Positions 252-50,314 of a stretch of 64,000 nucleotides of DNA are shown here, piece after piece; the stretch's first letter is position 1, and the number at the start of each line of letters is the position of its first letter. The position numbers were made by a program, and so were the translations under genes. The stretch lies in contig NIVC01000973.1 in NCBI GenBank assembly GCA_002269645.1, positions 50,444 through 114,443 of the forward strand, in the 5' to 3' direction. Below the pieces are notes generated by a model, which worked only from the letters and a program-made list of their open reading frames with translations, did not search any database and was not told the origin of the DNA. This stretch comes from Macrostomum lignano. Its lineage: Eukaryota.

Positions 252-778
252 CTCTCCGCCCCAACAGCCTCGACTCTCCACCCCAACAGCCCCGACTCTC
301 CACCCCAACAGCCCCGACTCCCCGCCCCAACAGCCCCGACTCTCCACCCCAACAGCCCCGACTCTCCACCCCAACAGCCCCGACTCTCCGCCCCAACAGC
401 CCCGACTCTCCGCCCCAACAACCCCGACTCTCTGCCCCAACAGCCCCGACTCTCCGCCCCAACAGCCCCGACTCTCCGCCCCAACAGCCCCGACTCTCCG
501 CCCCAACAGCCCCGACTCTCCGCCCCAACAGCCCCGACTCTCCGCCCCAACAGCCCCGACTCTCCACCCCAACAGCCCCGACTCTCCGCCCCAACAGCCC
601 CGACTCTCCGCCCCAACAACCCCGACTCCCCGCCCCAACAGCCCCGACTCTCCGCCCCGACTCTCCGCCCCAACAGCCCCGACTCTCCGCCCCAACAGCC
701 CCGACTCTCCGACCCAACGGCCCCGACTCTCCGCCCCAACTCTACGCCCCAACAGCCCCGACTCTCCGCCTTTCAGCC
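252..778. repeat. 22-bp minisatellite (CCCCAACAGCCCCGACTCTCCG)n, ~23 copies, in the GPCR intron
   Basis: Directly visible tandem units; explains ORFs 202..717, 207..752, 230..859 and 242..739. Confidence 0.95.
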
Positions 779-799
779 CCGCCCCGCAGCCTGACTCAC

Positions 800-1486
800 C
801 CGGCGCTGCGCCAGAGGCGTGGGCATGGCGGTCACCTGAGAAAACTTGCTCACAGCTGACGCAGCCGCCCGCCGACGTAGCCGCCGCCGTAGCGCCAGGT
901 AGATGCTGATGTACAGGCCGGCAATTACAGCCGCAGGCAGGTAGAAACTGCCAAGCGCGCTAAACACGATGTAGCCGCCATCGCCTGGCAGCTGGCAGAG
1001 CTGCTTCGTGTTGTTCTTCATCGTCCCGCCGCCAGTCCAGCTGAGCAGCGGGCCGAAGCTGATGGCTCCGCTCAGGCCGAATGCTGCCCCAATCATCATG
1101 AGCACAGTGCCGGTGGTTCTCTTATTAGCATACATAATGGGATACTTGATGGCGCAGTACCTGTCCACGGCAATGGCAGCGAGGTTGAGTATGCTGGCGG
1201 TGCAGAAGAAAATGTCGGACATAGTGAACACGGTGCACACGAATCTCGGCAGCAGCCAGACGTCATCGGTGAGGAAGGTTTTCACCTGGAGCGGCTGCAC
1301 CAGCAGACCGACGGCCATGTCGGCGCAGGCCAGGCTCACGATGAGAAAGTTCTGCGCCTGCCGCAGCGCCCTTGAGGTGAACACGGCCAGGATGACCAGG
1401 GTGTTGCCGATCACAGTCAGCAGGATGACGGCCAGCATCAAAGGCACCGCCAAGGCGCATTCTACTGCGCTGTGGGGCAGGGACAT
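800..1486 (-). CDS. Aminergic class A GPCR (tyramine/octopamine receptor-like), first coding exon, TM1-TM5 plus start of ICL3
   Basis: ORF 773..1486: TM1 GN (TVIGNTLV), TM2 QNFLIVSLACAD, TM3 Asp (SDIFFCTASILNL), DRY, YPIMYANKRT, TM5 FSALGSFYLP. Donor CGG|GTGAGT at 799; TTTCTAG acceptor 3 nt before the ATG. TM6-7 not found in the window. Confidence 0.9.
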
Positions 1487-8660: not shown

Positions 8661-9292
8661 TGACCAAGGCACTGGAATTAGGTTTTGTCACTCGAACTAT
8701 TTGCATACTATAATCCTCTTTCGCAGCCAGTAACCTTGATCGGTTTATTGTTGCACAGAATTCTCAAAGTCCGCTGCAAAATACATTCCTTTGGTTCTCA
8801 GTCATTCACCTTGCCTCAGTATCGGTTGAGACGAAAAGTGTTGGCAATCTAACGCAAAATTAGGCCTAATAAATCAAGATTTTCGGTATTCAAAATGGGA
8901 TTGAATTTCTGATGCACCCAGTACCTGGTATTCAACACCATTCCAGCTTAGGTGACTTCCTGCATTGATGTCAACACATTCAGTACTTACATTGAAGGAG
9001 AGAGACAGCCTCGAATAGAATGGGGCACGCGTGACGTTTTTTAGGCAATTTTTTGTTGTTTGAAAAATTTGGGAACTTTTCCTGGGCCAATCAGCGATCG
9101 AGGAGTTCGCAGCGCCTCCCCTAGCCTGCTCGCCCCCGCGCCGGCGCCATCTATAGTCACCGGCCAGCGGTACATAAACCGGAGCCGCAGCGGACCGCTG
9201 GGAGGAGGCACGCCAAGGTTGACCAGCGGCTTCTCTGACTGACTCCAAACTCTACAGCGCCTTTACCTGTTGCATTGACAAGCTGACAAAAT

Positions 9293-9607
9293 ATGCAGTC
9301 TCTGCTAGTTGCTATGCTGTTGCTGTGCTCCGCCGCTGCCGCTGCCGCTGCCGCCATTGTCGAGTCGACGCCGTCTGGCGATAACGCCGCTGCGGCCATG
9401 TGCCTGCCAGTGCAGCCAGGCGGCCGCCGGCCAGCGAGCCCCCGGCTGGCCGCCCTCTGCTCCCGCCTGATGCGCCAGCGCCGCTTCGAGCGGCCCTACC
9501 GCGGCTTCCTGCTGGCCTCGTCGCTGTCCTTCCAGCATCCCGGATACCACAGCCAGGAGCGGGCCAAGGGCGGCTTCGCCTCGGGCAGCCAGATGCGATA
9601 CGGATAG
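9293..9607 (+). CDS. Neuropeptide precursor (104 aa) for a C-terminally amidated -MRYamide peptide, NKY-like
   Basis: Hydrophobic signal peptide MQSLLVAMLLLCSAAAAA; dibasic RR followed by the 39-aa FERPY...GSQMRY; amide-donor Gly directly before the stop; GC-rich coding-like sequence; TATA-like TACATAAA at ~9171; AATAAA at 9787. Confidence 0.85.
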   Translation: MQSLLVAMLLLCSAAAAAAAAIVESTPSGDNAAAAMCLPVQPGGRRPASPRLAALCSRLMRQRRFERPYRGFLLASSLSFQHPGYHSQERAKGGFASGSQMRYG

Positions 9608-9660: not shown

Positions 9661-9732
<72 letters not shown>

Positions 9733-9739
9733 CTCTCTC
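9661..9739. repeat. (CT)n microsatellite in the neuropeptide 3' UTR
   Basis: Directly visible. Confidence 0.97.
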
Positions 9740-9931
9740 GCAGCGGCCGAACCCTTGACCAAGCAAATATTCCTGGCAACAAAAACAATAAACCGATGCA
9801 AAAAACTGATTAGCATTGAGCGGCACAATCATTCGCAAAAGTGATGCACAGTTGGCTTTAAAAAATTTTCTACTTTTTTTTCTGCCTTGTGTATTTTTCT
9901 TACCATAAACAGCTAAAATCCGTGGGCTCTA

Positions 9932-12388: not shown

Positions 12389-12663
12389 TGTTGAAATGAA
12401 CAAGTCATGAGCTGAGAGTATGCGAGACAAGACGAAAGTGCCAAGAGCACCGACAACCAACGATACGATTTATTATAAGCGAGGTTCAATAGTAGCCACC
12501 CCCACCCCAGGGCTAAAACACCAACAATGTACATTAAAATCACGATAGAGCAGAGACGTGCAAAGAGCGTAAGCCACGGACCATGAGTACACGCACAGAG
12601 TTAAGAACACAAACAATACACGGAGTAAAAGCGCACCCCAACCCCACGCACCAGGCCCAAACA
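12389..12663 (-). repeat. 3' LTR
   Basis: Differs from the 5' LTR by 4 substitutions and 1 indel counted by eye (~98% identity); AATAAA on the - strand at ~12470. Confidence 0.95.
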
Positions 12664-12718
12664 AAGACTGAAACCACAAGAACAAAATCAAAGAGTCAAG
12701 TACAGTCACAAAGAGTCA

Positions 12719-15680
12719 CTAGACTTTATAGCAGACAGTCTGGCGAGGCCGAAGCTCGTACGGCTCTCGCTGGCCACTGTTCATTGGCGCCACCGTTGGT
12801 TCCGGATCAGGAAGGTGCTCAACCATGGCGTCAGGAAGCTGCTCCGGCAACTCCGCCTCAGGTTCGGCCCCCTCAGGCGACCCAGGCGCACTCGGCCGGT
12901 CGGTCCACTGATTCGAGTGCGCCAGCCGCAGGCCGCCGTCCGATTGGTCCGCAGGGGCTACCAGCGCCGTGTTCTGGCCGTGCTGCACCACGAACTTGGC
13001 CGGAACCGGCGAAAATCCCGGACGCATCCTCAGCCAGATTGGATCGCCCACCTGCTCAGTCATGGTTAGCGGGTGGCGAAGGCGACGACCCCACATCAGA
13101 ACGTCCGGAGATGCCGCTCGATTTCCACTGGGCCGGCTGGTCCTGATCGTCAGCAGCAGTTTCTGCAGGAAGTGGTCGAACGGCACCATCTTCGTCCACG
13201 CCTTGAGTCCATCCTTGATGATCCTCACCAGCCTTTCTGCCTGACCGTTCGAGGCCGGATGGTACGGTGGAGTGTGCAGCTCCTGGCACCCGATGCTGCG
13301 CAGCCACTGGGACACTTACTCCGACTTGAACTCCGGCGCATTGTCTGACACCAGCGTCCGAGGCACTCCGTTCCTGGCAAATACCGCTCTCAGAACCCGC
13401 AGGACACTGTCCGCAGTTTGGTCTGGCACCTGAATCGCCTCAGGCCACCCGGAGTAGGAGTCCGACAGCAGCAGTAGCAGGCCGACATCAGAAATCTCAC
13501 AATGGTCCATGTGAACCCGGGACCACGGCTCACTCTCGGCTGGCCAGGTGTCGATTCTCCGCTGCAGGACTGGCCGAGTTTCAGAGCACTGCTGGCAGCG
13601 CTCCACAAAGCTGCGAACATCGCGATCGAGACCCGGCCACCAGAACTCCTTGGAGATGTGCGCCTTGGTGTTGTCGGCGCTCGGATGCACCTCGTCGTGC
13701 GCCACCTCCAGAATGCGCCTGCGGAGAACAGGTGGGGGCACAATTCTGGTTCCGTGGATCACCAGACCGTCTTCCACCGACAGCGCCTCCCGGCACGCTT
13801 TGTACGGCCTCTCCACCTGCGACACCTGGCCCCACCGGCCTGTTCTGATCTTCTGCTGCAGCCGCTTCATCAACGCGCACATCCTGGTTCCCTCACGAAG
13901 ATCCTGCAGAGTCACAAGAGCTCCTTCTGACACGACCTCTTCATGCTCCAGCTGGTGCACGGCGTCACTTGGAGGGTCTTGGGCAGCAAAACTCAAACGA
14001 GACAAGGCATCCGCATCCACCATCAGTCTTCCTGGCACATACTCAACCTCGTAGTCAAAAGCAGATAGTCGCAGGGCCCAGCGAGTTAGTCTTGCCGACA
14101 CTGTTTTAGGAAGGTTCTTGCTTGCTGGGATTGAAGATGTACTTCAGTGGCTCGTGGTCAGTCTGGAGCGTGAACCTCTTCCCCAGGAGCATCTTGCGGG
14201 CTCGCTCCACCGCCCAGACAATGGCCAGAGCCTCCCGCTCAATGTTGGAGTAGTTGGCCTCAGACTTGGTCAGCGCCCGAGAGAGGTACATGACTGGGTG
14301 CCCTGACTGCACCAGCACAGCGCCCAGAGACTGCTCGCTAGCATCCACCCGCAGACACACCGGCGAGTTGACGTCAAACGGTTTCACACACGGATTCGAG
14401 CTCAGGCTCTGCTTCACATTGGTGAACGCCGCCTCGGCAGCCGCACTCCAGTCAAACACACGGTCCGCTCGACGAAGTTCCTGCAGAGGCCGACACTTCT
14501 CAGCAAAGTTGGGAACCAATCGACCATAGAACTGCGCAAGTCCCAGAAACCGCTCTAGATCCTTCTTGCTTTTCGGAGCCTCCACATCCTGAATCTTCTG
14601 CACCATTCCCGGATCCGGCTTGATCCCCTCTTCATCGATGATGTGGCCCAGGAACTTTAGGCTTCTGGCCTCCAAAATGCACTTCGCTTCGTTGATTTTC
14701 ACATTAGCCGCCCTCAGCTTGTCCAGTACCTTCTCTCTGATATTCTGCAGCTCCGCCTTTGACACCGCTCCCATGAGCACATCATCCTGGTACACGATGA
14801 CACTTGGTTGCTCACCCAGCAGCTTCTCTATCTCGCGCTGGAACACAGACGGAGAAACCTTGATGCCGTACGGCAGCCTAAAGCGGTAGCAGCCGAAAGG
14901 GGTGTTGATCGTGGTGATGTCTTTTGACTCATTTTCCAGCGGAACCTGATAATAAGCGTCAGATAAATCCAGTCGGCAGAACAACTTCTTGTTTGCCATC
15001 TTTGAGAAGGCTGTCTCGATGGACGGAGTCAAGTACGTCTGGTCCTGCACCCACTGATTGACAGCAGTGTAGTCTCCGCAGATCCTCACAGACATCTTGT
15101 CGGATTTCACCGTCACCACTATGGGGCTGCCTTACCTCTGAGGACGTCACCTTCTCGCCTTCTCCATCAGGTCCAGCTCCTTCACCAGTGGACGCAGCGC
15201 CAGCGGCAGCTCTCTGGCTGGTTGGAAAATCGGCCTGGCTCCCGCCTTCAACAGGATCTCGCCAACTGCTCCCTTGATGCCCAACAAGCTCTCGTACCTG
15301 TTGTTGCTAGGCGGCTTGGTCTCATCTGAGTGGTGAGCTGGCAGCGAGCTGAGCAGATCCCGGCCGAGCAACCCGAACTTCTGCTCGCATTCGATGACGG
15401 GCAGCTCCGCCGCAGCGAAGCGGCCATCAGGGCCGTCAGTCTCCACCAGGCACTCCAGGATGCCGAGCTGCTTCATCACGTGCCCGTCGTAGGCCAGCAT
15501 CCGAGACTTGGGCGACTTCAGTGGCGGCCTGCCGAATTCTTCCCAGATCTTTCTCGAGATTAGTGAGCACGAGGCGCCGCTGTCCTTTTCCATTTTGACC
15601 TGCCTTCTGTTGATTTTCACATCGCAGAATGCAGCAGGGGTGCCCGCACCGCAGTAGAAAACCGGCTCGTCTCTGGTCAC
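12719..15680 (-). pseudogene. pol: Gypsy pol (protease-RT-RNase H-integrase), frameshifted
   Basis: PR KDSGASCSLIS (15147..15680); RT LDLSDAYYQ and YQDDVL, RNase H DASEQSLGAVL..EREALAIVWA..TDHEPL (14106..15119); IN HDEVH..CQQC, VHMDH, SDNAPEF (13316..14101) and YHPASNGQAER (12719..13315). Pieces lie in different frames. Confidence 0.95.
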
Positions 15681-15737
15681 GGCTGAGTCAGAGTGCTTGG
15701 ATTCGTTGGGTGCGACAAAGTGGGTCCTGGCAGTCCG

Positions 15738-16566
15738 GCAGACCTTCGCGAAGTGGCCAGTCTTCCCGCACTTGTGACAGGTGACCTTCAGGGCCCGGCA
15801 GTCTGTCGGTCTGCGATGTTGCGCCTGGCCGCAGCGCTGGCAGCTCGGCCTCCACCGGCTCTGGGCCTCACCATCTCAGCCGCGTTGATGCTGTTGGCAC
15901 CAGCAGAATCCTCTTCTGGCACCTCCTGGCTAGCGGGCGATGCCTGATGCACCGCCGAGTCTCCTTCAGCTTGGCCGGAGGCAGTCAGTGGCCCGAACGA
16001 AAATTTGCTCACCATCTGAAGTTGCTGCACGTACTCGGAGATCTGGCTCACCGAGAGCTCTGCGGAGACTTCGCGCTCGAGAACCTTGCTCCGGACCTCC
16101 TGGTTGCTGAGACCGGCGATGAGGCGCATTTTGATCAGCTGCTCAGCTGGATCAACATTCTCGCCCTTCAGCTTCTCGAATTCGCACACCACTGCCTGCT
16201 CTTGAAGTCGGGCAGCGAAGCCGGCAACCGTCTCGCCGTCTCCTTGGCGATGGACATGAAAGCCGCTCTCTCGGCAATCAGCAGCCTCTTCTTGGGCTCC
16301 AGAAACCGCACGAGGCACTCCTTGATTTCCGCCCACTTCATCTGCGAGAGCGGTTTGGGCGCGACCAGCTGCTTCACTTTGATGAGCTGTGCCACGCCAA
16401 GGCAGCCAAAGAAGGCATCGGTCAACGCCAGATTGCCGGCTGTGTCATCAGTGCGATCGGTGTCCTTCAATCCTTTTGATCGCGCCTGGGCGTCAAAGAC
16501 CTCGATCCATGCCCGCAACTCTTCAATGTTGTTGAGAGGCAGTGGGTCTCGTAGCTTTATAGACAT
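15738..16566 (-). pseudogene. gag: Gypsy gag with two zinc knuckles, frameshifted
   Basis: ATG at 16566 (MSIKLRDP..). Hand translation of 15842-15738 gives CQRCGQAQHRRPTDC..CHKCGKTGHFAKVC. ORFs 16168..16665 and 15788..16336 are in different frames. Confidence 0.88.
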
Positions 16567-16572
16567 CTGTAG

Positions 16573-16590
16573 ATCCTGCTTGCGACGCCA
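16573..16590 (-). promoter_or_regulatory. Primer binding site TGGCGTCGCAAGCAGGAT
   Basis: 18 nt starting TGG, 3 nt inside the 5' LTR boundary; complementary to a tRNA 3' end ...GACGCCA (possibly tRNA-Ser, inference). Confidence 0.85.
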
Positions 16591-16593
16591 AAA

Positions 16594-16867
16594 TGTTGAA
16601 ATGAACAAGTCATGAGCTGAGAGTATGCGAGACAAGACGATAGTGCCAACAGCACCGACAACCAACGATACGATTTATTACAAGCGAGGTTCAATAGTAG
16701 CCACCCCCACCCCAGGGCTAAAACACCAAAAATGTACATTAAAATCACGATAGAGCAGAGACGTGCAAAGAGCGTAAGCCACGGACCATGAGTACACGCA
16801 CAGAGTTAAGAACACAAACAATACACGGAGTAAAAGCGCACCCCAACCCCACGCACCAGGCCCAACA
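16594..16867 (-). repeat. 5' LTR
   Basis: TG...CA, near-identical to 12389-12663. Confidence 0.95.
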
Positions 16868-18146: not shown

Positions 18147-18331
18147 CTGACAGTCAGACAGGTGCGCCTGAGAGAGTGGGTTGAGATTTCAGTGATATCG
18201 ATTCAATATTTTAGTGATAATCTTAATAAATTATCTTTGAGGTGCCACGAGACCGCCCGGACGGGATGTAAACGTCATATTAATGCCGTTAAGACGCCGC
18301 TGAAACGTCATTCGGACGTCCTCAAGAGCCA

Positions 18332-21300
18332 TTAGACACCATCGAAGCTTCATTCAGACACCATCGAAGCTTCATTCAGACACCATCGAAGCCTCATTCA
18401 GACATCATCAAAGCTTCATTCAGACACCATCGAAGCTGCATTCAGACACCATCGAAGCTTCATTCAGACACCATCGAAGCTTCATTCAGACACCATCGAA
18501 GCTGCATTCAGACATCATCGAAGCTTCATTCAGACACCATCGAAGCTTCATTCAGACACCATCGAAGCTGATCATTCAGACACGATCGAAGCTTCATTCA
18601 GACACCATCGAAGCTTCATTCAAACACGATCGAAGCGTCATTCAGACACGATCGAAGCTTCATCCAGACACGGTCAAAGCTTCATTCAGACATCATCAAA
18701 GCTTCATTCAGACACCATCAAAGCTGCATTCAGACACGATCGAAGCTTCATTCAGACACCATCGAAGCTTCATTCAGACATCATAAAAGTTTCATTCAGA
18801 CACCATCGAAGCTTCATTCAGACATCATCTAAGCTTCATTCAGACATCATCGAAGCTTCATTCAGACACCATCGAAGCTTCATTCAGACACCATCGAAGC
18901 TTCATTCAGACATCATCAAAGCTTCATTCAGACACCATGGAAGCTTCATTCAGACATCATCGAAGCTTCATTCAGACATCATCAAAGCTTCATTCAGACA
19001 CGATCGAAGCTTCATTCAGACACCATCGAAGATTCATTCAGACATCATCAAAGCTTCATTCAGACACGATCGAAGCTTCATTCAGACACCATTAAAGCTT
19101 CATTCAGACACCATCGAAGCTGATCATTCAGACACGATCGAAGCTTCATTCAATTACCATCGAAGCTTCATTCAAACACCATCGAAGCTTCATTCAGACA
19201 CCATCGAAGCTTCATTCAGACATCATCGAAGCGTCATTCATACACGATCGAAGCTTCATCCAGACACGGTCGAAGCTTCATTCAGACACCATCGAAGCTT
19301 CATTCAGACACCATCAAAGCTTCATTCAGACACCATCGAAGCTTCATACAGACACCATCGAAGCTGCATTCAGACATCATCAAAGCTTCATTCAGACACC
19401 ATCGAAGCTGCATTCAGACATCATCAAAGCTTCATTCAGACACCATTGAAGCTTCATTCAGACATCATCGAAGCTTCAGTCAGACATCATCAAAGCTTCA
19501 TTCAGACACAATCAAAGCTTCATTCAGACACCATCGAAGCTTCATACAGACACCATCGAAGCTTCATTCAGACACCATCGAAGCTTCATACAGACACCAT
19601 CGAAGCTTCATTCAGACACCATCGAAGCTTCATTCAGACACCATCGAAGCTTCATTTAGACACCATCGTAGCTTCATTCAGACACCATCGAAGCTGATCA
19701 TTCAGACACCATCGAAGCTGATCATTCAGACACCATCGAAGCTTCATTCAGACACCATCGAAGCTTCATTCAGACACGATCGAAGCTGATCATTCAGACA
19801 CCATCGAAGCTGATCATTCAGACACCATCGAAGCTTCATTCAGACACCATCGAAGCTTCATTCAGACACGATCGAAGCTTCATTCAGACACCATCGAAGC
19901 TGATCATTCAGACACCATCGAAGCTGATCATTCAGACACCATCGAAGCTGATCATTCAGACACCATCGAAGCTGATCATTCAGACACGATCGAAGCTTCA
20001 TTTAGACATCATCGAAGCTTCATTCAAACACGATCAAAGCGTCATTCAGACACGATCGAAGCTTCATCCAGACACGGTCCAAGCTTCATTCAGACACCAT
20101 CGAAGCTTCATTCAGACACCATCGAAGCTGCATTCAGACATCATCGAAGCTTCATTCAGACATCATCAAAGCTTCATTCAGACACCATCGAAGCTTCATT
20201 CAGACACGATCGAAGCTTCATTCAGACACCATCGAAGCTGATCATTCAGACACCATCGAAGCTTCATTCAGACACCATCGAAGCTTCATTCAGACACCAT
20301 CGAAGCTTCATTCAGACACCATCGAAGCTGATCATTCAGACACCATCGAAGCTTCATTCAGACATCATCAAAGCTTCATTCAGACATCATCAAAGCTTCA
20401 TTCAGACACCATCGAAGCTGCATTCAGACATCATCAAAGCTTCATTCAGACACCATCGAAGCTGCATTCAGACATCATCGAAGCTTCATTCAGACATCAT
20501 CAAAGCTTTATTCCGACACCATCGAAGCTTCATTCAGACACCATCGAAGCTTCATTCAGACATCATCAAAGCTTCATTCAGACACGATCGAAGCTGCATT
20601 CAGACATCATGGAAGCTTAATTCAGACATCATCGAAGCTTCATTCAGACATCATCAAAGCTTCATTCAGACACGATCGAAGCTTCATTCAGACACCATCG
20701 AAGCTTCATTCAGACACCATCGAAGCTTCATTCAGACATCATCAAAGCTTCATTCAGACACGATCGAAGCTTCATTCAGACACCATTAAAGCTTCATTCA
20801 GACACCATCGAAGCTGATCATTCAGACACGATCGAAGCTTCATTCAATTACCATCGAAGCTTCATTCAAACACCATCGAAGCTTCATTCAGACACCATCG
20901 AAGCTTCATTCAGACATCATCGAAGCGTCATTCATACACGATCGAAGCTTCATCCAGACACGGTCGAAGCTTCATTCAGACACCATCGAAGCTTCATTCA
21001 GACACCATCAAAGCTTCATTCAGACACCATCGAAGCTTCATACAGACACCATCGAAGCTGCATTCAGACATCATCAAAGCTTCATTCAGACACCATCGAA
21101 GCTGCATTCAGACATCATCAAAGCTTCATTCAGACACCATCGAAGCTGCATTCAGACATCATCGAAGCTTCAGTCAGACATCATCAAAGTTTCATTCAGA
21201 CACCATCAAAGCTTCATTCAGACACCATCGAAGCTTCATACAGACACCATCGAAGCTTCATTCAGACACGATCGAAGCTTCATTTAGACACCATCGTAGC

Positions 21301-24300
21301 TTCATTCAGACACCATCGAAGCTGATCATTCAGACACCATCGAAGCTGATCATTCAGACACCATCGAAGCTTCATTCAGACACCATCGAAGCTTCATTCA
21401 GACACCATCGAAGCTTCATTCAGACACCATCGAAGCTTCATTCAGACACCATCGAAGCTGATCATTCAGACACCATCGAAGCTGATCATTCAGACACCAT
21501 CGAAGCTGATCATTCAGACACCATCGAAGCTGATCATTCAGACACGATCGAAGCTTCATTTAGACATCATCGAAGCTTCATTCAAACACGATCAAAGCGT
21601 CATTCAGACACGATCGAAGCTTCATCCAGACACGGTCCAAGCTTCATTCAGACACCATCGAAGCTTCATTCAGACACCATCGAAGCTTCATTCAGACACC
21701 ATCGAAGCTGATCATTCAGACACCATCGAAGCTGATCATTCAGACACCATCGAAGCTGATCATTCAGACACCATCGAAGCTGATCATTCAGACACGATCG
21801 AAGCTTCATTTAGACATCATCGAAGCTTCATTCAAACACGATCAAAGCGTCATTCAGACACGATCGAAGCTTCATCCAGACACGGTCCAAGCTTCATTCA
21901 GACATCATCAAAGCTTCATTCAGACACCATCGAAGCTGCATTCAGACATCATCGAAGCTTCATTCAGACATCATCAAAGCTTTATTCCGACACCATCGAA
22001 GCTTCATTCAGACACCATCGAAGCTTCATTCAGACATCATCAAAGCTTCATTCAGACACGATCGAAGCTGCATTCAGACATCATGGAAGCTTAATTCAGA
22101 CATCATCGAAGCTTCATTCAGACATCATCAAAGCTTCATTCAGACACGATCGAAGCTTCATTCAGACACCATCGAAGCTTCATTCAGACACCATCGAAGC
22201 TTCATTCAGACATCATCAAAGCTTCATTCAGACACGATCGAAGCTTCATTCAGACACCATTAAAGCTTCATTCAGACACCATCGAAGCTGATCATTCAGA
22301 CACGATCGAAGCTTCATTCAATTACCATCGAAGCTTCATTCAAACACCATCGAAGCTTCATTCAGACACCATCGAAGCTTCATTCAGACATCATCGAAGC
22401 GTCATTCATACACGATCGAAGCTTCATCAGACACGGTCGAAGCTTCATTCAGACACCATCGAAGCTTCATTCAGACACCATCAAAGCTTCATTCAGACAC
22501 CATCGAAGCTTCATACAGACACCATCGAAGCTGCATTCAGACATCATCAAAGCTTCATTCAGACACCATCGAAGCTGCATTCAGACATCATCAAAGCTTC
22601 ATTCAGACACCATCGAAGCTGCATTCAGACATCATCGAAGCTTCAGTCAGACATCATCAAAGTTTCATTCAGACACCATCAAGCTTCATTCAGACACCAT
22701 CGAAGCTTCATAGACACCATCGAAGCTTCATTCAGACACGATCGAAGCTTCATTTAGACACCATCGTAGCTTCATTCAGACACCATCGAAGCTGATCATT
22801 CAGACACCATCGAAGCTGATCATTCAGACACCATCGAAGCTTCATTCAGACACCATCGAAGCTTCATTCAGACACCATCGAAGCTTCATTCAGACACCAT
22901 CGAAGCTTCATTCAGACACCATCGAAGCTGATCATTCAGACACCATCGAAGCTGATCATTCAGACACCATCGAAGCTGATCATTCAGACACCATCGAAGC
23001 TGATCATTCAGACACGATCGAAGCTTCATTTAGACATCATCGAAGCTTCATTCAAACACGATCAAAGCGTCATTCAGACACGATCGAAGCTTCATCCAGA
23101 CACGGTCCAAGCTTCATTCAGACACCATCGAAGCTTCATTCAGACATCATCAAAGCTTCATTCAGACACCATCGAAGCTTCATTCAGACACCATCGAAGC
23201 TTCATTCAGACACGATCGAAGCTGATCATTCAGACACCATCGAAGCTGATCATTCAGACACCATCGAAGCTTCATTCAGACACCATCGAAGCTTCATTCA
23301 GACACGATCGAAGCTTCATTCAGACACCATCGAAGCTGATCATTCAGACACCATCGAAGCTGATCATTCAGACACCATCGAAGCTGATCATTCAGACACC
23401 ATCGAAGCTGATCATTCAGACACGATCGAAGCTTCATTTAGACATCATCGAAGCTTCATTCAACACGATCAAAGCGTCATTCAGACACGATCGAAGCTTC
23501 ATCAGACACGGTCCAAGCTTCATTCAGACACCATCGAAGCTTCATTCAGACACCATCGAAGCTGCATTCAGACATCATCGAAGCTTCATTCAGACATCAT
23601 CAAAGCTTCATTCAGACACCATCGAAGCTTCATTCAGACACGATCGAAGCTTCATTCAGACACCATCGAAGCTGATCATTCAGACACCATCGAAGCTTCA
23701 TTCAGACACCATCGAAGCTTCATTCAGACACCATCGAAGCTTCATTCAGACACCATCGAAGCTTCATTCAGACACCATCGAAGCTTCATTCAGACATCAT
23801 CAAAGCTTCATTCAGACATCATCAAGCTTCATTCAGACACCATCGAAGCTGCATTCAGACATCATCAAAGCTTCATTCAGACACCATCGAAGCTGCATTC
23901 AGACATCATCGAAGCTTCATTCAGACATCATCAAAGCTTCATTCCGACACCATCGAAGCTTCATTCAGACACCATCGAAGCTTCATTCAGACATCATCAA
24001 AGCTTCATTCAGACACGATCGAAGCTGCATTCAGACATCATGGAAGCTTATTCAGACATCATCGAAGCTTCATTCAGACATCATCAAAGCTTCATTCAGA
24101 CACGATCGAAGCTTCATTCAGACACCATCGAAGCTTCATTCAGACACCATCGAAGCTTCATTCAGACATCATCAAAGCTTCATTCAGACACGATCGAAGC
24201 TTCATTCAGACACCATTAAAGCTTCATTCAGACACCATCGAAGCTTCATTCAGACACGATCGAAGCTTCATTCAATTACCATCGAAGCTTCATTCAACAC

Positions 24301-27300
24301 CATCGAAGCTTCATTCAGACACCATCGAAGCTTCATTCAGACATCATCGAAGCGTCATTCATACACGATCGAAGCTTCATCAGACACGGTCGAAGCTTCA
24401 TTCAGACACCATCGAAGCTTCATTCAGACACCATCAAAGCTTCATTCAGACACCATCGAAGCTTCATACAGACACCATCGAAGCTGCATTCAGACATCAT
24501 CAAAGCTTCATTCAGACACCATCGAAGCTGCATTCAGACATCATCAAGCTTCATTCAGACACCATCGAAGCTGCATTCAGACACATCGAAGCTTCATTCA
24601 GACATCATCAAAGTTCATTCAGACACCATCAAAGCTTCATTCAGACACCATCGAAGCTTCATACAGACACCATCGAAGCTTCATTCAGACACGATCGAAG
24701 CTTCATTCAGACACCATCGAAGCTTCATTCAGACACCATCGAAGCTTCATTCAGACACCATCGAAGCTTCATTCAGACACCATCGAAGCTTCATTCAGAC
24801 ACCATCGAAGCTTCATTCAGACACCATCGAAGCTTCATTCAGACACCATCGAAGCTTCATTCAGACACCATCGAAGCTGATCATTCAGACACCATCGAAG
24901 CTTCATTCAGACACCATCGAAGCTTCATTCAGACACCATCGAAGCTGATCATTCAGACACGATCGAAGCTTCATTCAGACACATCGAAGCTTCATTCAGA
25001 CACGATCGAAGCTGATCATTCAGACACGATCGAAGCTTCATCCAGACACGGTCGAAGCTTCATTCAGACACCATCGAAGCTTCATTCAGACACCATCGAA
25101 GCTTCATTCAGACACCATCGAAGCTTCATTCAGACACCATCGAAGCTTCATTCAGACACGATCGAAGCTTCATTCAGACACATCGAAGCTTCATTCAGAC
25201 ACATCGAAGCTTCATTCAGACACCATCGAAGCTTCATTCAGACACCATCGAAGCTTCATTCAGACACCATCGAAGCTTCATTCAGACATCATCGAAGCTT
25301 CATTCAGACATCATCAAAGCTTCATTCAGACACCATCGAAGCTGCATTCAGACATCATCGAAGCTTCATTCAGACATCATCAAAGCTTCATTCAGACACC
25401 ATCGAAGCTGCATTCAGACACCATTAAAGCTTCATTCAGACATCATCAAAGCTTCATTCAGACACCATCGAAGCTGCATTCAGACATCATCAAAGCTTCA
25501 TTCAGACATCATCAAAGCTTCATTCAGACACCATCAAAGCTTCATTCAGACACCATCGAAGCTTCATTCAGACACCATCGAAGCTTCATTCAGACACCAT
25601 CGAAGCTTCATTCAGACATCATCGAAGCTTCATTCAGACACCATCGAAGCTTCATTCAGACATCATCAAAGCTTCATTCAGACACGATCGAAGCTTCATT
25701 CAGACACCATCGAAGCTTCATTCAGACACCATCAAAGCTTCATTCAGACACCATCGAAGCTTCATTCAGACATCATCAAAGCTTCATTCAGACACATCGA
25801 AGCTTCATTCAGACACCATCGAAGCTTCATTCAGACATCATCAAAGCTTCATTCAGACACGATCGAAGCTTCATTCAGACACCATCGAAGCTTCATTCAG
25901 ACACCATCGAAGCTTCATTCAGACACGATCGAAGCTTCATTCAACACCATCGAAGCTTCATTCAGACACCATCGAAGCTTCATTCAGACACCATCGAAGC
26001 TTCATTCAGACACATCGAAGCTTCATTCAGACACGATCGAAGCTTCATTCAGACACCATCGAAGCTTCATTCAGACACCATCGAAGCTTCATTCAGACAC
26101 CATCGAAGCTTCATTCAGACACCATCGAAGCTTCATTCAGACACCATCGAAGCTTCATTCAGACACCATCGAAGCTGATCATTCAGACACCATCGAAGCT
26201 TCATTCAGACATCATCGAAGCTTCATTCAGACACCATCGAAGCTGATCATTCAGACACCATCGAAGCTTCATTCAGACACCATCGAAGCTTCATTCAGAC
26301 ATCATCAAAGCTTCATTCAGACATCATCAAAGCTTCATTCAGACACCATCGAAGCTGCATTCAGACATCATCGAGGCTTCATTCAGACATCATCAAAGCT
26401 TCATTCAGACACCATCGAAGCTGCATTCAGACACCATTAAAGCTTCATTCAGACATCATCAAAGCTTCATTCAGACACCATCGAAGCTGCATTCAGACAT
26501 CATCAAAGCTTCATTCAGACATCATCAAAGCTTCATTCAGACACCATCAAAGCTTCATTCAGACACCATCGAAGCTTCATTCAGACACCATCGAAGCTTC
26601 ATTCAGACACCATCGAAGCTTCATTCAGACATCATCGAAGCTTCATTCAGACACCATCGAAGCTTCATTCAGACACCATCAAAGCTTCATTCAGACACCA
26701 TCGAAGCTTCATTCAGACACCATCGAAGCTTCATTCAGACACCATCAAAGCTTCATTCAGACACCATCGAAGCTTCATTCAGACATCATCAAAGCTTCAT
26801 TCAGACACGATCGAAGCTTCATTCAGACACCATCGAAGCTTCATTCAGACATCATCAAAGCTTCATTCAGACACGATCGAAGCTTCATTCAGACACCATT
26901 AAGCTTCATTCAGACATCGAAGCTTCATTCAGACACGATCGAAGCTTCATTCAGACACCATCGAAGCTTCATTCAGACATCATCGAAGCTTCATTCAGAC
27001 ACATCGAAGCTTCATTCAGACACATCGAAGCTTCATTCAGACACCATCGAAGCTTCATTCAGACACCATCGAAGCTTCATTCAGACACCATCGAAGCTTC
27101 ATTCAGACACCATCGAAGCTCATTCAGACACCATCGAAGCTTCATTCAGACACCATCGAAGCTTCATTCAGACACCATCGAAGCTTCATTCAGACACCAT
27201 CGAAGCTTCATTCAGACACCATCGAAGCTTCATTCAGACACCATCGAAGCTTCATTCAGACACATCAAAGCTTCATTCAGACACCATCGAAGCTTCATTC

Positions 27301-30300
27301 AGACACCATCGAAAGCTTCATTCAGACACCATCGAAGCTTCATTCAGACACATCGAAGCTTCATTCAGACACCATCGAAGCTTCATTCAGACACCATCGA
27401 AGCTTCATTCAGACACCATCGAAGCTTCATTCAGACACCATCGAAGCTTCATTCAGACACGATCGAAGCTTCATTCAGACACATCGAAGCTTCATTCAGA
27501 CACCATCGAAGCTTCATTCAGACACCATCGAAGCTTCATTCAGACACCATCGAAGCTTCATTCAGACACATCGAAGCTTCATTCAGACACCATCGAAGCT
27601 TCATTCAGACACCATCGAAGCTTCATTCAGACACGATCGAAGCTTCATTCAGACACGATCGAAGCTTCATTCAGACACGATCGAAGCTTCATTCAGACAC
27701 CATCGAAGCTGCATTCAGACATCATCGAAGCTTCATTCAGACATCATCAAAGCTTCATTCAGACATCAAAGCTTCATTCAGACACCATCGAAGCTTCATT
27801 CAGACACCATCGAAGCTGATCATTCAGACACGATCGAAGCTTCATTCAGACACCATCGAAGCTTCATTCAAACACGATCGAAGCGTCATTCAGACACGAT
27901 CGAAGCTTCATCCAGACACGGTCGAAGCTTCATTCAGACATCATCAAAGCTTCATTCAGACACCATCGAAGCTTCATTCAGACATCATCGAAGCTTCATT
28001 CAGACACCATCGAAGCTTCATTCAGACACATCGAAGCTGATCATTCAGACACCATCGAAGCTTCATTCAGACACCATCGAAGCTTCATTCAGACACCATC
28101 GAAGCTTCATTCAGACACCATCGAAGCTGCATTCAGACACGATCGAAGCTTCATTCAGACACCATCGAAGCTTCATTCAGACACGATCGAAGCTTCATTC
28201 AGACACCATCGAAGCTTCATTCAGACACATCGAAGCTTCATTCAGACACGATCGAAGCTTCATTCAGACACCATCGAAGCTTCATTCAGACACCATCGAA
28301 GCTTCATTCAGACACATCGAAGCTTCATTCAGACACATCGAAGCTTCATTCAGACACATCGAAGCTTCATTCAGACACGATCGAAGCTTCATTCAGACAC
28401 CATCGAAGCTTCATTCAGACACCATCGAAGCTTCATTCAGACACCATCGAAGCTTCATTCAGACACCATCGAAGCTTCATTCAGACACGATCGAAGCTTC
28501 ATTCAGACACCATCGAAGCTTCATTCAGACACCATCGAAGCTTCATTCAGACACGATCGAAGCTTCATTCAGACACCATCGAAGCTTCATTCAACACGAT
28601 CGAAGCTTCATTCAGACACGATCGAAGCTTCATTCAGACACCATCGAAGCTTCATTCAGACACATCAAAGCTTCATTCAGACACCATCGAAGCTTCATTC
28701 AGACATCATCGAAGCTTCATTCAGACACCATCGAAGCTTCATTCAGACATCATCGAAGCTTCATTCAGACACGATCAAGCTTCATTCAGACACATCGAAG
28801 CTGATCATTCAGACACCATCGAAGCTTCATTCAGACACCATCGAAGCTTCATTCAGACACCATCGAAGCTTCATTCAGACACCATCGAAGCTTCATTCAG
28901 ACACATCGAAGCTTCATTCAGACACATCGAAGCTTCATTCAGACACGATCGAAGCTTCATTCAGACACCATCGAAGCTTCATTCAGACACATCGAAGCTG
29001 CATTCAGACACGATCGAAGCTTCATTCAGACACCATCGAAGCTTCATTCAGACACCATCGAAGCTTCATTCAGACATCATCGAAGCTTCATTCAGACACC
29101 ATCGAAGCTGATCATTCAGACACCATCGAAGCTTCATTCAGACATCATCGAAGCTTCATTCAGACACGATCGAAGCTTCATTCAGACACCATCGAAGCTT
29201 CATTCAGACACCATCGAAGCTTCATTCAGACACCATCGAAGCTTCATTCAGACACCATCAAAGCTTCATTCAGACACCATCGAAGCTTCATTCAGACATC
29301 ATCAAAGCTTCATTCAGACACGATCGAAGCTTCATTCAGACACCATTAAAGCTTCATTCAGACACCATCGAAGCTGATCATTCAGACACGATCGAAGCTT
29401 CATTCAATTACCATCGAAGCTTCATTCAGACACCATCGAAGCTTCATTCAGACACCATCGAAGCTTCATTCAGACATCATCGAAGCTTCATTCAGACACG
29501 ATCGAAGCTTCATTCAGACACATCGAAGCTTCATTCAGACACCATCGAAGCTTCATTCAGACACCATCGAAGCTTCATTCAGACACCATCGAAGCTTCAT
29601 TCAGACATCATCGAAGCTTCATTCAGACACCATCGAAGCTTCATTCAGACACCATCGAAGCTTCATTCAGACACCATCGAAGCTTCATTCAGACACGATC
29701 GAAGCTTCATTCAGACACGATCGAAGCTTCATTCAGACACGATCGAAGCTTCATTCAGACACCATCGAAGCTGCATTCAGACATCATCGAAGCTTCATTC
29801 AGACATCATCAAAGCTTCATTCAGACATCAAAGCTTCATTCAGACACCATCGAAGCTTCATTCAGACACCATCGAAGCTTCATTCAGACACCATCGAAGC
29901 TTCATTCAGACACATCGAAGCTTCATTCAACACGATCGAAGCGTCATTCAGACACGATCGAAGCTTCATCCAGACACGGTCGAAGCTTCATTCAGACATC
30001 ATCAAAGCTTCATTCAGACACCATCGAAGCTTCATTCAGACATCATCGAAGCTGCATTTAGACACGATCAAAGCTTCATTCAGACAGCATTGAAGCTGAT
30101 CATTCAGACACCATCGAAGCTTCATTCAGACACCATCGAAGCTTCATTCAGACACCATCGAAGCTTCATTCAGACACCATCGAAGCTGCATTCAGACACG
30201 ATCGAAGCTTCATTCAGACACGATCGAAGCTTCATTCAGACACGATCGAAGCTTCATTCAGACACCATCGAAGCTTCATTCAGACAGCATTGAAGCTGCA

Positions 30301-31957
30301 TTCAGACACGATCGAAGCTTCATTCAGACACCATCGAAGCTTCATTCAGACACCATCGAAGCTTCATTCAGACATCATCGAAGCTGCATTCAGACACGAT
30401 CGAAGCTTCATTCAGACACGATCAAAGCTTCATTCAGACACGATCGAAGCTTCATTCAGACACCATCGAAGCTTCATTCAGACACCATCGAAGCTTCATT
30501 CAGACACCATCGAAGCTTCATTCAGACACCATCGAAGCTGCATTCAGACACGATCGAAGCTTCATTCAGACACCATCGAAGCTTCATTCAGACACCATCG
30601 AAGCTGATCATTCAGACACGATCGAAGCTTCATTCAGACACCATCGAAGCTTCATTCAAACACGATCGAAGCGTCATTCAGACACGATCGAAGCTTCATC
30701 CAGACACGGTCGAAGCTTCATTCAGACATCATCAAAGCTTCATTCAGACACCATCGAAGCTTCATTCAGACATCATCAAAGCTTCATTCAGACACCATCG
30801 AAGCTTCATTCAGACATCATCGAAGCTGCATTTAGACACGATCAAAGCTTCATTCAGACAGCATTGAAGCTGATCATTCAGACACCATCGAAGCTTCATT
30901 CAGACACCATCGAAGCTTCATTCAGACACCATCGAAGCTTCATTCAGACACCATCGAAGCTGCATTCAGACACGATCGAAGCTTCATTCAGACACGATCG
31001 AAGCTTCATTCAGACACGATCGAAGCTTCATTCAGACACCATCGAAGCTTCATTCAGACAGCATTGAAGCTGCATTCAGACACGATCGAAGCTTCATTCA
31101 GACACCATCGAAGCTTCATTCAGACACCATCGAAGCTTCATTCAGACATCATCGAAGCTGCATTCAGACACGATCGAAGCTTCATTCAGACACGATCGAA
31201 GCTTCATTCAGACACGATCGAAGCTTCATTCGGACACCATCGAAGCTTCATTCAGACACCATCGAAGCTTCATTCAGACACCATCGAAGCTTCATTCAGA
31301 CACGATCGAAGCTGCATTCAGACACGATCGAAGCTTCATTCAGACACCATCGAAGCTTCATTCAGACACCATCGAAGCTTCATTCAGACACGATCGAAGC
31401 TTCATTCAGACACGATCGAAGCTTCATTCAGACAGCATTGAAGCTGATCATTCAGACACCATCGAAGCTTCATTCAAAAACCATCGAAGCTTCATTCAGA
31501 CACCATCGAAGCTTCATTCAGACATCATCGAAGCTGCATTCAGACACGATCGAAGCTTCATTCAGACACGATCGAAGCTTCATTCAGACACGATCGAAGC
31601 TTCATTCAGACACGATCGAAGCTTCATTCAGACACGATCGAAGCTTCATTCAGACACCATCGAAGCTTCATTCAGACACCATCGAAGCTTCATTCAGACA
31701 CGATCGAAGCTTCATTCAGACAGCATTGAAGCTGATCATTCAGACACCATCGAAGCTGCATTCAGACACCATCGAAGCTTCATTCAGACACCATCGAAGC
31801 TTCATTCATTCACCATCAAAGCTTCATTCATTCACCATCAAAGCTTCATTCATTCACCATCGAAGCTTCATTCAGACACCATCGAAGCTTCATTCAGACA
31901 CCATCGAAGCTTCATTCAGACACGATCGAAACTTCATTCAGACATCATTTAAACACC
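18332..31957. repeat. 13.6-kb 22-bp satellite (CAGACACCATCGAAGCTTCATT)n, ~620 copies, inside the last DEG/ENaC intron
   Basis: Directly visible; the unit contains the palindrome GAAGCTTC (HindIII site); recurrent variant units define higher-order blocks. Confidence 0.98.
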
Positions 31958-32249
31958 ATTAAATAAGCTCAGAACACAGACAGTAGACATATGACATCCA
32001 TTTTTGTATCGAACTATTTTCTCCAATACAGTTTTGAAAGATTATGTTAAGCCGTTCAAATAAACGCGACTCGCAATGCCAAAACCGGAATCCTCGACAA
32101 CGCCGCTCTAATTATGCAGCTTGGCTAAAGTAAAGTTCCCGGATATTACATTTGTGTTTCAAATTCTGCTGTTGAGACAGAGCGGGATCTGTGAGCAGCT
32201 GTGTTTAAAGCAAAGATATACTAAAGCGACCATGCGTATGCAGACAGAC

Positions 32250-32367: not shown

Positions 32368-32465
32368 CTGTGCGCACGGTTTGGCCCGTGTTTATGGGGC
32401 AAGATGTTCAGAGCCAGGTTATTGGCGATTCTATGAAATTCAATTGTCTGCACAGGAGTTCGGCA

Positions 32466-50287: not shown

Positions 50288-50314
50288 GTTAGCACCTGCG
50301 TCTCCTGATTTCTC

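What the first reader, a model, noticed from the sequence alone, without database searches (positions are those of the whole stretch)
9293..9607. Candidate NKY-family neuropeptide gene (39-aa FERP...MRYamide)
The layout is signal peptide, pro-region with 2 Cys, RR, a 39-residue peptide, Gly, stop. An N-terminal F-x-R-P and C-terminal -MRYamide in a ~40-aa peptide recall lophotrochozoan NKY peptides (FWR/QP...MRYamide, as I recall them), not NPF (GRPRFamide with PP-fold Tyr spacing, absent here). Cleavage after AK could instead give GGFASGSQMRYamide. Short, Ala-rich precursors like this are easily missed by annotation.
Basis: partly seen in the sequence, partly recalled or inferred. Interest (0 to 1): 0.7.

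Follow-up and report, generated by a model that had tools for sequence, protein, structure and literature searches.

The report
Probable flatworm NKY-like RYamide neuropeptide gene
A small, unannotated gene in a Macrostomum-like flatworm genome most likely encodes a secreted precursor that is cut to release one 39-residue amidated "RYamide" peptide resembling the NKY neuropeptides of molluscs and annelids, but no transcript or orthologue could be checked, so it remains a well-supported prediction rather than a proven gene.

Summary
The ORF at 9293-9607 (+) exists exactly as described: signal peptide, pro-region with 2 Cys, R-Q-R-R site, 39-aa peptide, Gly, stop. The window is from a macrostomid flatworm (neighbouring GPCR exon 72% identical to Macrostomum lignano). 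The feature set is well above chance: it is the only one of the window's 90 ATG-ORFs of 60 aa or more with a signal-peptide-like start and the only one with an R[FY]G end. The simulated joint rate is about 2e-6 per ORF. Codon-position GC (0.69/0.60/0.83) matches real exons (P about 0.0007). CCAAT, a TATA-like box, an in-frame upstream stop and AATAAA frame a compact single-exon gene. NPF/NPY, luqin and typical sNPF layouts are excluded. NKY affinity is mixed. Local profiles see only the MRYG end. Global alignment to 37 mollusc/annelid NKY-1 peptides is significant (3/1000 shuffles; 26/2000 and 47/2000 under stricter nulls; 0/300 decoys). The best match is FERPYRGFLLASSLS against FWRPMGGLALESRLA. 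The hallmark Trp is missing. No homologue, transcript or orthologue could be retrieved, because the source genome is absent from the searchable collections. Verdict: probable real prepropeptide gene (about 0.75-0.8), plausibly a divergent NKY-1 member (about 0.4 overall).

The parts
9087..9091 (+). CCAAT motif about 80 bp upstream of the TATA-like box (putative promoter element)
   Evidence: Read directly from the sequence; function inferred only.
9171..9178 (+). TATA-like box TACATAAA. It would put the transcription start near 9205 and give a 5'UTR of about 85-90 nt
   Evidence: Sequence. There is no ATG between here and 9293, and an in-frame stop lies three codons upstream of the ATG. Inferred, not tested.
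9293..9607 (+). Complete single-exon coding sequence, 104 codons plus TAG
   Evidence: It is the only positive coding frame of six and has GC3 0.83. Periodicity P about 0.0007. The locus is unique in the window.
9293..9355 (+). Predicted signal peptide, aa 1-21 (MQSLLVAMLLLCSAAAAAAAA). The cleavage point within the Ala run is uncertain
   Evidence: Hydrophobic core LLVAMLLLC followed by small residues; Kyte-Doolittle 9-residue means of 2-3.3. It is the only SP-like start among 90 ORFs. SignalP was not available.
9356..9472 (+). Pro-region, aa 22-60, basic and Ala/Pro-rich, with Cys36 and Cys56 (possible disulphide)
   Evidence: Translation and composition. No similarity to anything.
9473..9484 (+). 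R61-Q-R-R64 cleavage site for a prohormone convertase or furin-type enzyme (R-x-R-R)
   Evidence: Sequence. Its role follows from established convertase specificity (inference).
9485..9601 (+). Predicted mature peptide, aa 65-103: FERPYRGFLLASSLSFQHPGYHSQERAKGGFASGSQMRY (39 aa, about 4451 Da, pI about 10)
   Evidence: NKY-1-like by global alignment; not significant by local HMM.
9602..9607 (+). Gly104 (amide donor) followed directly by the TAG stop
   Evidence: Sequence. Precedents for amidation from an RYG-stop end: planarian NPP-4, whose QSVFRYamide was detected by MS, and many molluscan NKY-1 precursors ending RYG.
9661..9739 (+). (CT)n microsatellite in the presumed 3'UTR, followed by ...cgcag (a possible but unnecessary 3' splice site)
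   Evidence: TRF and sequence.
9787..9792 (+). AATAAA polyadenylation signal, about 180 nt after the stop; the only one between 9600 and 10000

Best explanation
A compact, intron-less gene of about 0.6 kb in a macrostomid flatworm encodes a 104-residue prepropeptide. Inferred pathway: the signal peptide (about aa 1-21) is removed on entry to the ER. A prohormone convertase then cuts after R61-Q-R-R64. The C-terminal Gly104, which is exposed without any carboxypeptidase step because the precursor ends there, is used by peptidylglycine alpha-amidating monooxygenase. The product is one 39-residue peptide, FERPYRGFLLASSLSFQHPGYHSQERAKGGFASGSQMRY-NH2. That peptide is most likely a divergent member of the lophotrochozoan NKY-1 family that has lost the family's Trp. 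It would act as a neuropeptide or hormone on a rhodopsin-type GPCR of the NPY/sNPF-receptor group. Shown here: the ORF and its layout, its improbability by chance, its coding periodicity, and its above-chance global similarity to NKY-1. Inferred: transcription, every processing step, neuronal expression, the receptor and homology.
For: ORF and layout. Rarity of signal peptide + dibasic site + R[FY]G-stop: (1 of 90 real ORFs; about 2e-6 per simulated ORF). Coding signature: (GC3>GC1>GC2 as in real exons, P about 0.0007; only positive frame). Gene-like frame: CCAAT, TATA-like box, no upstream ATG, in-frame upstream stop, single AATAAA. Same precursor architecture as NKY: one peptide of 31-44 aa at the extreme C-terminus after a di/tribasic site, often ending RYG-stop. 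N-terminus F-E-R-P-Y-R-G-F-L against the published NKY-1 core FW[RQ]P[LM]G[YG]; 7/15 ungapped identities with aplacophoran FWRPMGGLALESRLA. Global alignment to 37 NKY-1 peptides: 22.4 against 9.0+-4.1 (3/1000), N-terminal 18 aa 3/1000, within-half 26/2000 (N-terminal 18 aa 7/2000), within-thirds 47/2000, 0/300 decoys, top of 617 C-terminal 40-mers. Accepted family members also lack the Trp (scaphopod SFFNPLGY, Dinophilus NKY-like) or have two residues between P and G (Solemya, Platynereis). NKY1 is already reported in a polyclad flatworm.
Against: No transcript evidence of any kind. No homologue in 5.8e9 clustered or 1.84e9 representative proteins (the one hit, P0049, is a translated tandem repeat), nor in metagenome contigs. 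These negatives are weak: an NKY family profile also recovered nothing, and the source genome is absent from the collection. Local HMMs from NKY-1 (narrow or wide) and NKY-2 score 2-6 bits, reached by 12-62% of MRYG-keeping shuffles, and a six-frame HMM scan does not rank the ORF. The highest-information family residue, Trp, is Glu here, and the conserved N-terminal Lys is Arg. There is no similarity to the nemertean/phoronid/brachiopod subset. About ten family tests were run, so P of 0.003-0.02 is suggestive only. The pro-region is basic and Ala/Pro/Arg-rich, as a random GC-rich ORF would be, and the codon score alone is no better than that of ORFs antisense to real exons.
Confidence: 0.42

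Rival explanations
1. A real, expressed prepropeptide gene for an amidated RYamide peptide that is lineage-specific (an orphan). Its NKY-1-like features (F-x-R-P...G start, Gly/Ser-rich tail, RYG-stop) arose by convergence or chance.
For: All the gene-level evidence applies equally. Profile HMMs find nothing beyond MRYG. The Trp is absent. No homologue was found anywhere. Flatworm neuropeptidomes hold many lineage-specific 'spp'/'npp' precursors.
Against: The order-dependent similarity to NKY-1 survives within-half and within-third shuffles and 300 decoys. The shared architecture and the placement of the motif directly after the cleavage site are exactly those of NKY-1.
Confidence: 0.28
2. Not a gene: a chance ORF in an isolated GC-rich island of repeat-rich intergenic DNA that happens to mimic a neuropeptide precursor.
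For: GC-rich DNA gives long ORFs in several frames here (a 177-aa antisense ORF). The composition (Ala, Arg, Pro, Gly, Ser, Leu) is what GC-rich sequence yields. The codon score ranks only 19/71 and equals that of antisense-of-exon ORFs. No homologue or transcript is known.
Against: For the specific R[FY]G-stop class the expected chance rate is about 4e-4 per Mb of window-like sequence, which is under one per genome of several hundred Mb. Codon-position periodicity P is about 0.0007. No other frame is positive. The promoter-like and poly(A) signals and the R-x-R-R site sit in the right places. There is independent similarity to NKY-1.
Confidence: 0.22
3. An sNPF-type (LFRFamide/RYamide) precursor. 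Monobasic cleavage after K92 would release GGFASGSQMRYamide, akin to annelid GSLMRYamide and planarian GSVFRYamide.
For: The C-terminal hexapeptide GSQMRY matches Platynereis GSLMRY at 5/6 positions. Planarian npp-4 also ends with an RYG-stop peptide that is amidated. Flatworms have sNPF-type receptors.
Against: Protostome sNPF-type precursors carry short peptides flanked by dibasic sites, usually several copies; here there is one copy and no dibasic site before it. K92 has Arg at P3, not at P4/P6/P8, so monobasic cleavage is not favoured (established convertase rules). The N-terminal half, which this reading discards, is the part that resembles NKY-1.
Confidence: 0.05
4. A member of the NPF/NPY superfamily, which is expanded in flatworms.
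For: The length (39 aa) and C-terminal R-Y-amide are NPY-like. Planarians have NPY-type members ending RPRYamide, one of them (NPY-7) at the precursor's C-terminus.
Against: There is no RPR motif and no Pfam Hormone_3 hit at E<=1. Global alignment to planarian NPYs is no better than shuffles (294/500). The peptide does not follow the signal peptide. The coding sequence runs uninterrupted through R-Y-G-stop, whereas flatworm and vertebrate NPY genes have an intron in the Arg codon.
Confidence: 0.02

Closest known systems
NKY-1 (neuropeptide KY, subgroup 1) of molluscs, annelids, nemerteans, brachiopods and phoronids; NKY1 also reported in a polyclad flatworm
   Same: Precursor layout: signal peptide, spacer, di/tribasic site, then a single 31-44-aa peptide at the very C-terminus ending x-R-Y-Gly, often with the stop directly after Gly. 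N-terminal F-x-[RQ]-P-x(1,2)-G-[aromatic/G]-L directly after the cleavage site. Gly/Ser-rich C-terminal half (compare Lottia ...DGSQMFRYG). Global similarity above shuffles and decoys.
   Different: Glu replaces the near-invariant Trp. Arg-Arg replaces the 'diagnostic' Lys. The LPAS.R / PLPVETRL.SFGS core is only loosely matched (LLASSLSF). The spacer is short (about 40 aa) and basic rather than long and acidic. Local profile scores are not significant.
NKY-2 (G[YF]WIWMPAQG-type NKY)
   Same: C-terminal ...G.(K)LMRYG against ...GSQMRYG. Similar length and C-terminal position. A P-G-Y aligns with the family's Q-G-Y. Marginal global score (33/500).
   Different: No W-x-W-x-P motif. The candidate has 12 extra N-terminal residues. 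Not significant.
sNPF-type peptides (LFRFamide; Platynereis GSLMRYamide; planarian npp-4 GSVFRY/QSVFRYamide)
   Same: The C-terminal G-S-x-[MF]-R-Y-amide motif. npp-4 likewise ends RYG-stop and is amidated.
   Different: Those precursors hold several 6-7-residue peptides, each between dibasic sites. Here there is a single 39-mer with no dibasic site near the C-terminal motif.
NPF/NPY superfamily (Moniezia NPF, Schmidtea npy-1 to -11)
   Same: Length of about 36-40 residues and an amidated aromatic C-terminus preceded by Arg.
   Different: No RPR[FY], no helical L..Y..L..Y core, a different position in the precursor, no intron in the Arg codon, no Pfam match.

Membership tests
NKY-1 | Single peptide at the extreme C-terminus of the precursor ending x-R-Y-Gly (amidation), followed by basic residues or the stop | tested here: met
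   ...SQMRYG-stop. Many published NKY-1 precursors end ...FRYG/LRYG-stop.
NKY-1 | Peptide of about 31-44 residues preceded by a di/tribasic cleavage site | tested here: met
   39 residues after R-Q-R-R. Family range read.
NKY-1 | Core motif FW[RQ]P[LM]G[YG] at the peptide's N-terminus (De Oliveira et al. 2019, PMC6425005) | tested here: inconclusive
   The candidate is F-E-R-P-Y-R-G-F: F, R, P and G are present, with an aromatic after G. Trp is replaced by Glu, and two residues rather than one lie between P and G. Accepted members without Trp (scaphopod SFFNPLGY, Dinophilus) or with two residues before G (Solemya, Platynereis) exist.
NKY-1 | Conserved 'diagnostic' Lys at the N-terminal end of the peptide | tested here: not met
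   Arg-Arg precedes Phe65 and there is no Lys. The feature is stated.
NKY-1 | Sequence similarity to the family beyond the C-terminal tetrapeptide | tested here: inconclusive
   Global alignment to 37 members: 3/1000, 26/2000 and 47/2000 under three shuffle nulls, and 0/300 decoys. Local HMMs: 5.7-6.1 bits, reached by 12-14% of shuffles, and the ORF is not ranked in a six-frame scan. No signal against the nemertean/phoronid subset.
NKY-1 | Orthologues in related species / clustering with NKY in family-wide analyses | not testable with these tools
   No macrostomid or polyclad sequence could be fetched. The database searches were empty, and the polyclad NKY1 sequence is not in the held supplement.
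NKY-2 | Core G[YF]WIWMPAQG(Y) motif | tested here: not met
   The peptide has no Trp; only P-G-Y aligns with Q-G-Y.
NPF/NPY | C-terminal R-P-R-[FY]-amide and a PP-fold core; Pfam PF00159 | tested here: not met
   The end is Q-M-R-Y. No Pfam hit at E<=1. No similarity to planarian NPYs.
NPF/NPY | Peptide directly after the signal peptide; intron inside the codon of the Arg before the terminal F/Y | tested here: not met
   The peptide is C-terminal, after a 41-aa pro-region. The DNA is colinear through CGA-TAC-GGA-TAG. The feature is described.
sNPF-type (LFRFamide/RYamide) | C-terminal x-[LFM]-R-[FY]-amide | tested here: met
   GSQMRY-Gly against GSLMRYamide / GSVFRYamide.
sNPF-type (LFRFamide/RYamide) | Short peptide(s) bounded by dibasic sites, usually several copies per protostome precursor | tested here: not met
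   One copy only. The nearest upstream basic residue is a single Lys (E-R-A-K) 12 residues before the end. Compare npp-4.
Luqin/RYamide | Peptide directly after the signal peptide and two conserved Cys in the C-terminal part of the precursor (from established knowledge of the family) | tested here: not met
   The peptide is C-terminal and both Cys lie upstream of it.
Generic amidated neuropeptide precursor | Signal peptide + convertase site + C-terminal Gly | tested here: met
   Heuristic signal-peptide test and hydropathy; R-Q-R-R and Gly-stop. SignalP and NeuroPred were not available.
Generic amidated neuropeptide precursor | Transcribed, and expressed in neurons or secretory cells; peptide detectable | not testable with these tools
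   No read data are accessible, and the source genome is absent from the gene-position collection.

The most novel reading that the evidence does not exclude
This is the macrostomid orthologue of NKY-1, in a form that has lost the family's Trp and sits in a short, basic, single-exon precursor. That would place NKY signalling in Macrostomorpha, a flatworm lineage for which no NKY report turned up in the papers searched here (it is reported in a polyclad and is said to be lost in triclads and parasites). It would also provide a natural Trp-less variant for finding the still-unresolved cognate NKY receptor.
Probability: 0.4. Interest if true: 0.5.

Novelty: new member of a known kind. Interest (0 to 1): 0.42.

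Why it matters
NKY is a lophotrochozoan peptide family related in form to NPY/NPF. Its true receptor is still debated: the annelid "NKY receptor" groups with sNPF receptors and responds only at high nanomolar to micromolar doses. Flatworm neuropeptidomes are best known from planarians and parasites, which are said to have lost several ancestral peptides, and NKY1 has so far been reported only in a polyclad larva. A macrostomid NKY-like gene would help date that loss. It would also give Macrostomum, a transgenic and RNAi-tractable model, a handle on this system. Finally, it shows that short, Ala-rich, single-exon precursors escape both annotation and standard homology searches. If it is instead an orphan RYamide, it adds to the lineage-specific peptide repertoire. 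Either way the practical value is modest until a transcript or peptide is seen.

Tried and rejected
1. Word-indexed search of 5.8e9 proteins with the precursor found nothing at E<=10.
2. Exhaustive phmmer against 1.84e9 representatives gave one hit, P0049, which is a translated tandem repeat.
3. My last database search used a 17-sequence NKY/NKY-2 profile and also found nothing. That shows the tool cannot recover even true NKYs, so the negatives in 1 and 2 carry little weight.
4. Pfam found no family for the precursor.
5. A metagenome scan for relatives was empty.
6. Exact-product look-ups failed for the candidate, three other window ORFs and the M. lignano GPCRs P0001/P0002. Synteny and expression could therefore not be approached.
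7. Contigs carrying the more distant GPCR homologues P0003-P0005 are metagenomic or short transcripts and were of no use.
8. My first NKY test used only nemertean, phoronid and brachiopod sequences and was negative. I had begun to reject NKY until the published molluscan consensus showed that set was too narrow.
9. The codon log-likelihood score alone does not discriminate.
10. There is no paralogue or repeat copy of the locus in the window.
11. I looked for a splice donor that would bypass the stop or extend the ORF. No GT with a donor-like context lies before the TAG, so I kept the single-exon reading.
12. Literature searches for the peptide strings and for a Macrostomum neuropeptidome found nothing. 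The polyclad NKY1 sequence is not in the held supplement.

Full report
**The observation.** The window holds an ATG-to-TAG ORF at 9293-9607 on the + strand, 104 codons long. Its product is MQSLLVAMLLLCSAAAAAAAA / IVESTPSGDNAAAAMCLPVQPGGRRPASPRLAALCSRLMRQ / RR / FERPYRGFLLASSLSFQHPGYHSQERAKGGFASGSQMRY / G / stop. The cleavage site is in fact R-Q-R-R, a full R-x-R-R convertase motif.

**The organism.** The window is animal DNA. About 47% of it is minisatellite arrays (my sum of the intervals). It also holds an LTR-retrotransposon gag-pol, an aminergic GPCR exon, DEG/ENaC exons and a K2P-channel exon. The GPCR exon's best matches are two Macrostomum lignano proteins at 72% identity, and the next hits fall to 48%. 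The source is therefore a macrostomid flatworm, either another Macrostomum species or a diverged paralogous region. None of the window's ORFs, nor the M. lignano proteins, are on record in the gene-position collection. The source genome is thus not represented there, and the lack of database hits says nothing about expression.

**Is the ORF more than chance?**
- The joint feature set is rare. Of the window's 90 ATG-ORFs of at least 60 aa, the candidate is the only one with a signal-peptide-like start and the only one ending R[FY]G.
- Across all six frames of the 64 kb, R[FYW]G followed by a stop or basic residues occurs only here and in a 6-aa ORF.
- In 3 Mb each of Markov-simulated sequence (composition of the GC island, of real exons, or of the whole window), no ORF combined the three features. 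The expected rate is 0.3-2e-6 per ORF, or 4e-4 to 7e-3 per Mb.
- For the looser class "any signal peptide + dibasic site + C-terminal Gly", I estimate about 0.005 per window and tens per genome. The R[FY]G end is what makes the case.
- The ORF carries the coding signature of this genome. GC at codon positions 1/2/3 is 0.69/0.60/0.83, the same ordering as the window's real exons (GC3 0.71-0.79). Only 0.07% of null ORFs of equal length and composition reach that GC3-GC2 difference.
- It is the only one of six frames with a positive codon log-likelihood. By that score alone it ranks 19th of 71, level with ORFs antisense to real exons, so I give that score little weight.
- The surroundings look like a small gene. 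A GC island (0.66-0.79) sits in flanks of about 0.40 GC. CCAAT lies at 9087-9091 and TACATAAA at 9171-9178. There is no ATG between that box and the start codon, an in-frame stop lies three codons upstream, and a single AATAAA lies at 9787-9792.
- No donor-like GT precedes the stop, so the single-exon reading stands. The locus is unique in the window.
- I put the probability of a real protein-coding gene at about 0.75-0.8.

**Families that can be excluded.**
- NPF/NPY: there is no RPR[FY] motif, no Pfam hit and no similarity to planarian NPY peptides (294/500 shuffles as good). The peptide is not next to the signal peptide. The DNA runs uninterrupted through Arg-Tyr-Gly-stop, whereas flatworm and vertebrate NPY genes have an intron in that Arg codon.
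- Luqin/RYamide: the layout is wrong.
- sNPF-type: these peptides share the C-terminal motif (GSQMRY against Platynereis GSLMRY and planarian GSVFRY). But their precursors carry short, dibasic-flanked copies. The only basic residue near the candidate's C-terminus is a lone Lys with Arg at P3, which does not fit monobasic cleavage rules.

**NKY.** My first test was negative. HMMs built from the nemertean, phoronid and brachiopod NKY peptides and from NKY-2 (PMC8557429 supplement) aligned only the MRYG end. Of 1000 shuffles that keep MRYG, 144 to 623 scored as well. Global alignment to that subset was also null, and NKY-2 was marginal (33/500). All 17 of those sequences have a Trp that the candidate lacks.

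The published diagnostics changed this. The 37 mollusc and annelid NKY-1 peptides in the same supplement show:
- a peptide that begins zero to three residues after a di/tribasic site with F-W-[RQ]-P-x-G-[YG]-[LVM];
- a Gly/Ser-rich tail;
- in many species an end at RYG-stop.

The candidate reads RR|F-E-R-P-Y-R-G-F-L-L-A-S-S-L...G-S-Q-M-R-Y-G-stop. Lottia ends ...DGSQMFRYG. Solemya and Platynereis also have two residues between P and G. Scaphopod (SFFNPLGY) and Dinophilus members lack the Trp.

Against this broad set the results are:
- Mean global score 22.4 against 9.0+-4.1 for MRYG-keeping shuffles (3/1000).
- The N-terminal 18 residues alone reach 3/1000.
- Under stricter nulls that preserve compositional polarity: 26/2000 for within-half shuffles (N-terminal 18 aa 7/2000) and 47/2000 for within-third shuffles.
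- None of 300 window-derived decoys given the same MRYG end comes close (best 14.1).
- It is the top C-terminal 40-mer of 617 segments in the window (next 12.2).
- The best alignment is ungapped: FERPYRGFLLASSLS against aplacophoran FWRPMGGLALESRLA, 7/15 identical.
- The raw score is at the level of the most divergent accepted member (Dinophilus, 19.4) and far below typical members (37-53).

Against this, local HMMs from the broad set still give only 5.7-6.1 bits (12-14% of shuffles) and would not pick the ORF out of a six-frame scan. I also ran about ten family tests. I conclude that NKY-1 affinity is plausible (about 0.55 given a real gene) but not demonstrated.

**Mechanism (inferred).** Signal peptidase cuts within or after the Ala run. 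A convertase cuts after R-Q-R-R. The C-terminal Gly, already exposed, is converted to a Tyr-amide. The result is one basic 39-mer of about 4451 Da. Planarian NPP-4 is a flatworm precedent for amidation from an RYG-stop end, shown by MS. The likely target is a rhodopsin-type GPCR of the NPY/sNPF clade. Annelid and oyster NKY activate sNPF-type receptors only weakly, and the true receptor is unknown. The pro-region's two Cys may form a loop, but nothing is known of its function.

**Novelty.** NKY1 is already reported from a polyclad flatworm, and the family is widespread in Lophotrochozoa. At best this is a new, divergent member in a lineage (Macrostomorpha) for which I found no report, and otherwise an orphan RYamide. 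It is an in-silico prediction. A transcript, a conserved orthologue or a detected peptide would settle it.

Noticed in passing
window 18330-31948 (also 33165-33620): A 13.6-kb array of about 617 copies of a 22-bp satellite (CATTCAGACACCATCGAAGCTT, 92% matches). It lies between exons that look like one DEG/ENaC gene on the minus strand: 39198-39746 matches ASC profile positions 1-82, 35005-35391 matches 150-260, and 17352-18146 matches 419-455. A giant satellite, plus other minisatellites, apparently sits inside introns of an ion-channel gene.
   Followed up: partly
window 1-64000: Extreme minisatellite load: at least 24 distinct tandem arrays (periods 2-178 bp) cover about 30 kb, or 47% of the window. 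Many create long spurious ORFs in several frames.
   Followed up: partly
window 773-1486 (-): An exon of an aminergic (tyramine/octopamine-like) rhodopsin GPCR covering TM1-5. It is 72% identical to two Macrostomum lignano proteins, and this is what identifies the source as a macrostomid flatworm. The rest of the gene probably lies beyond the window start.
   Followed up: partly
window 12583-16665 (-): A degenerate LTR-retrotransposon gag-pol (aspartyl protease at 15147-15680, reverse transcriptase/RNase H at 14106-15119, integrase at 12719-14101). It is split into several ORFs, so it is probably an inactive copy.
   Followed up: partly
window 32205-32881 and 33877-34622: Two copies of the same segment about 1.67 kb apart. 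They carry identical 159-aa ORFs on the minus strand and near-identical 23-bp repeat arrays, which indicates a local segmental duplication within the repeat field.
   Followed up: no
window 49246-49716 (+), 49958-50308 (+), 54925-55566 (+): Three ORFs with exon-like codon scores (0.28-0.34 bits per codon, GC3 0.68-0.78) and no Pfam match. The first has an internal signal-peptide-like stretch and many Cys, and the last is Cys/Ser/Gly-rich. They are possibly exons of unannotated secreted proteins.
   Followed up: partly
window 45536-46153 (-), with exon-like ORFs at 44384-44716 (-) and 43296-43580 (-): The first exon of a two-pore-domain (K2P-like) potassium channel (weak Ion_trans_2 match at its end). 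Further exon-like ORFs lie downstream on the same strand, separated by 9-bp and 23-bp repeat arrays.
   Followed up: no
window 9335-9358: The poly-Ala run of the candidate's signal peptide is encoded by an imperfect (GCC GCT)n hexanucleotide repeat. Its length is likely to be polymorphic, which could shift the signal-peptide cleavage point between alleles.
   Followed up: no
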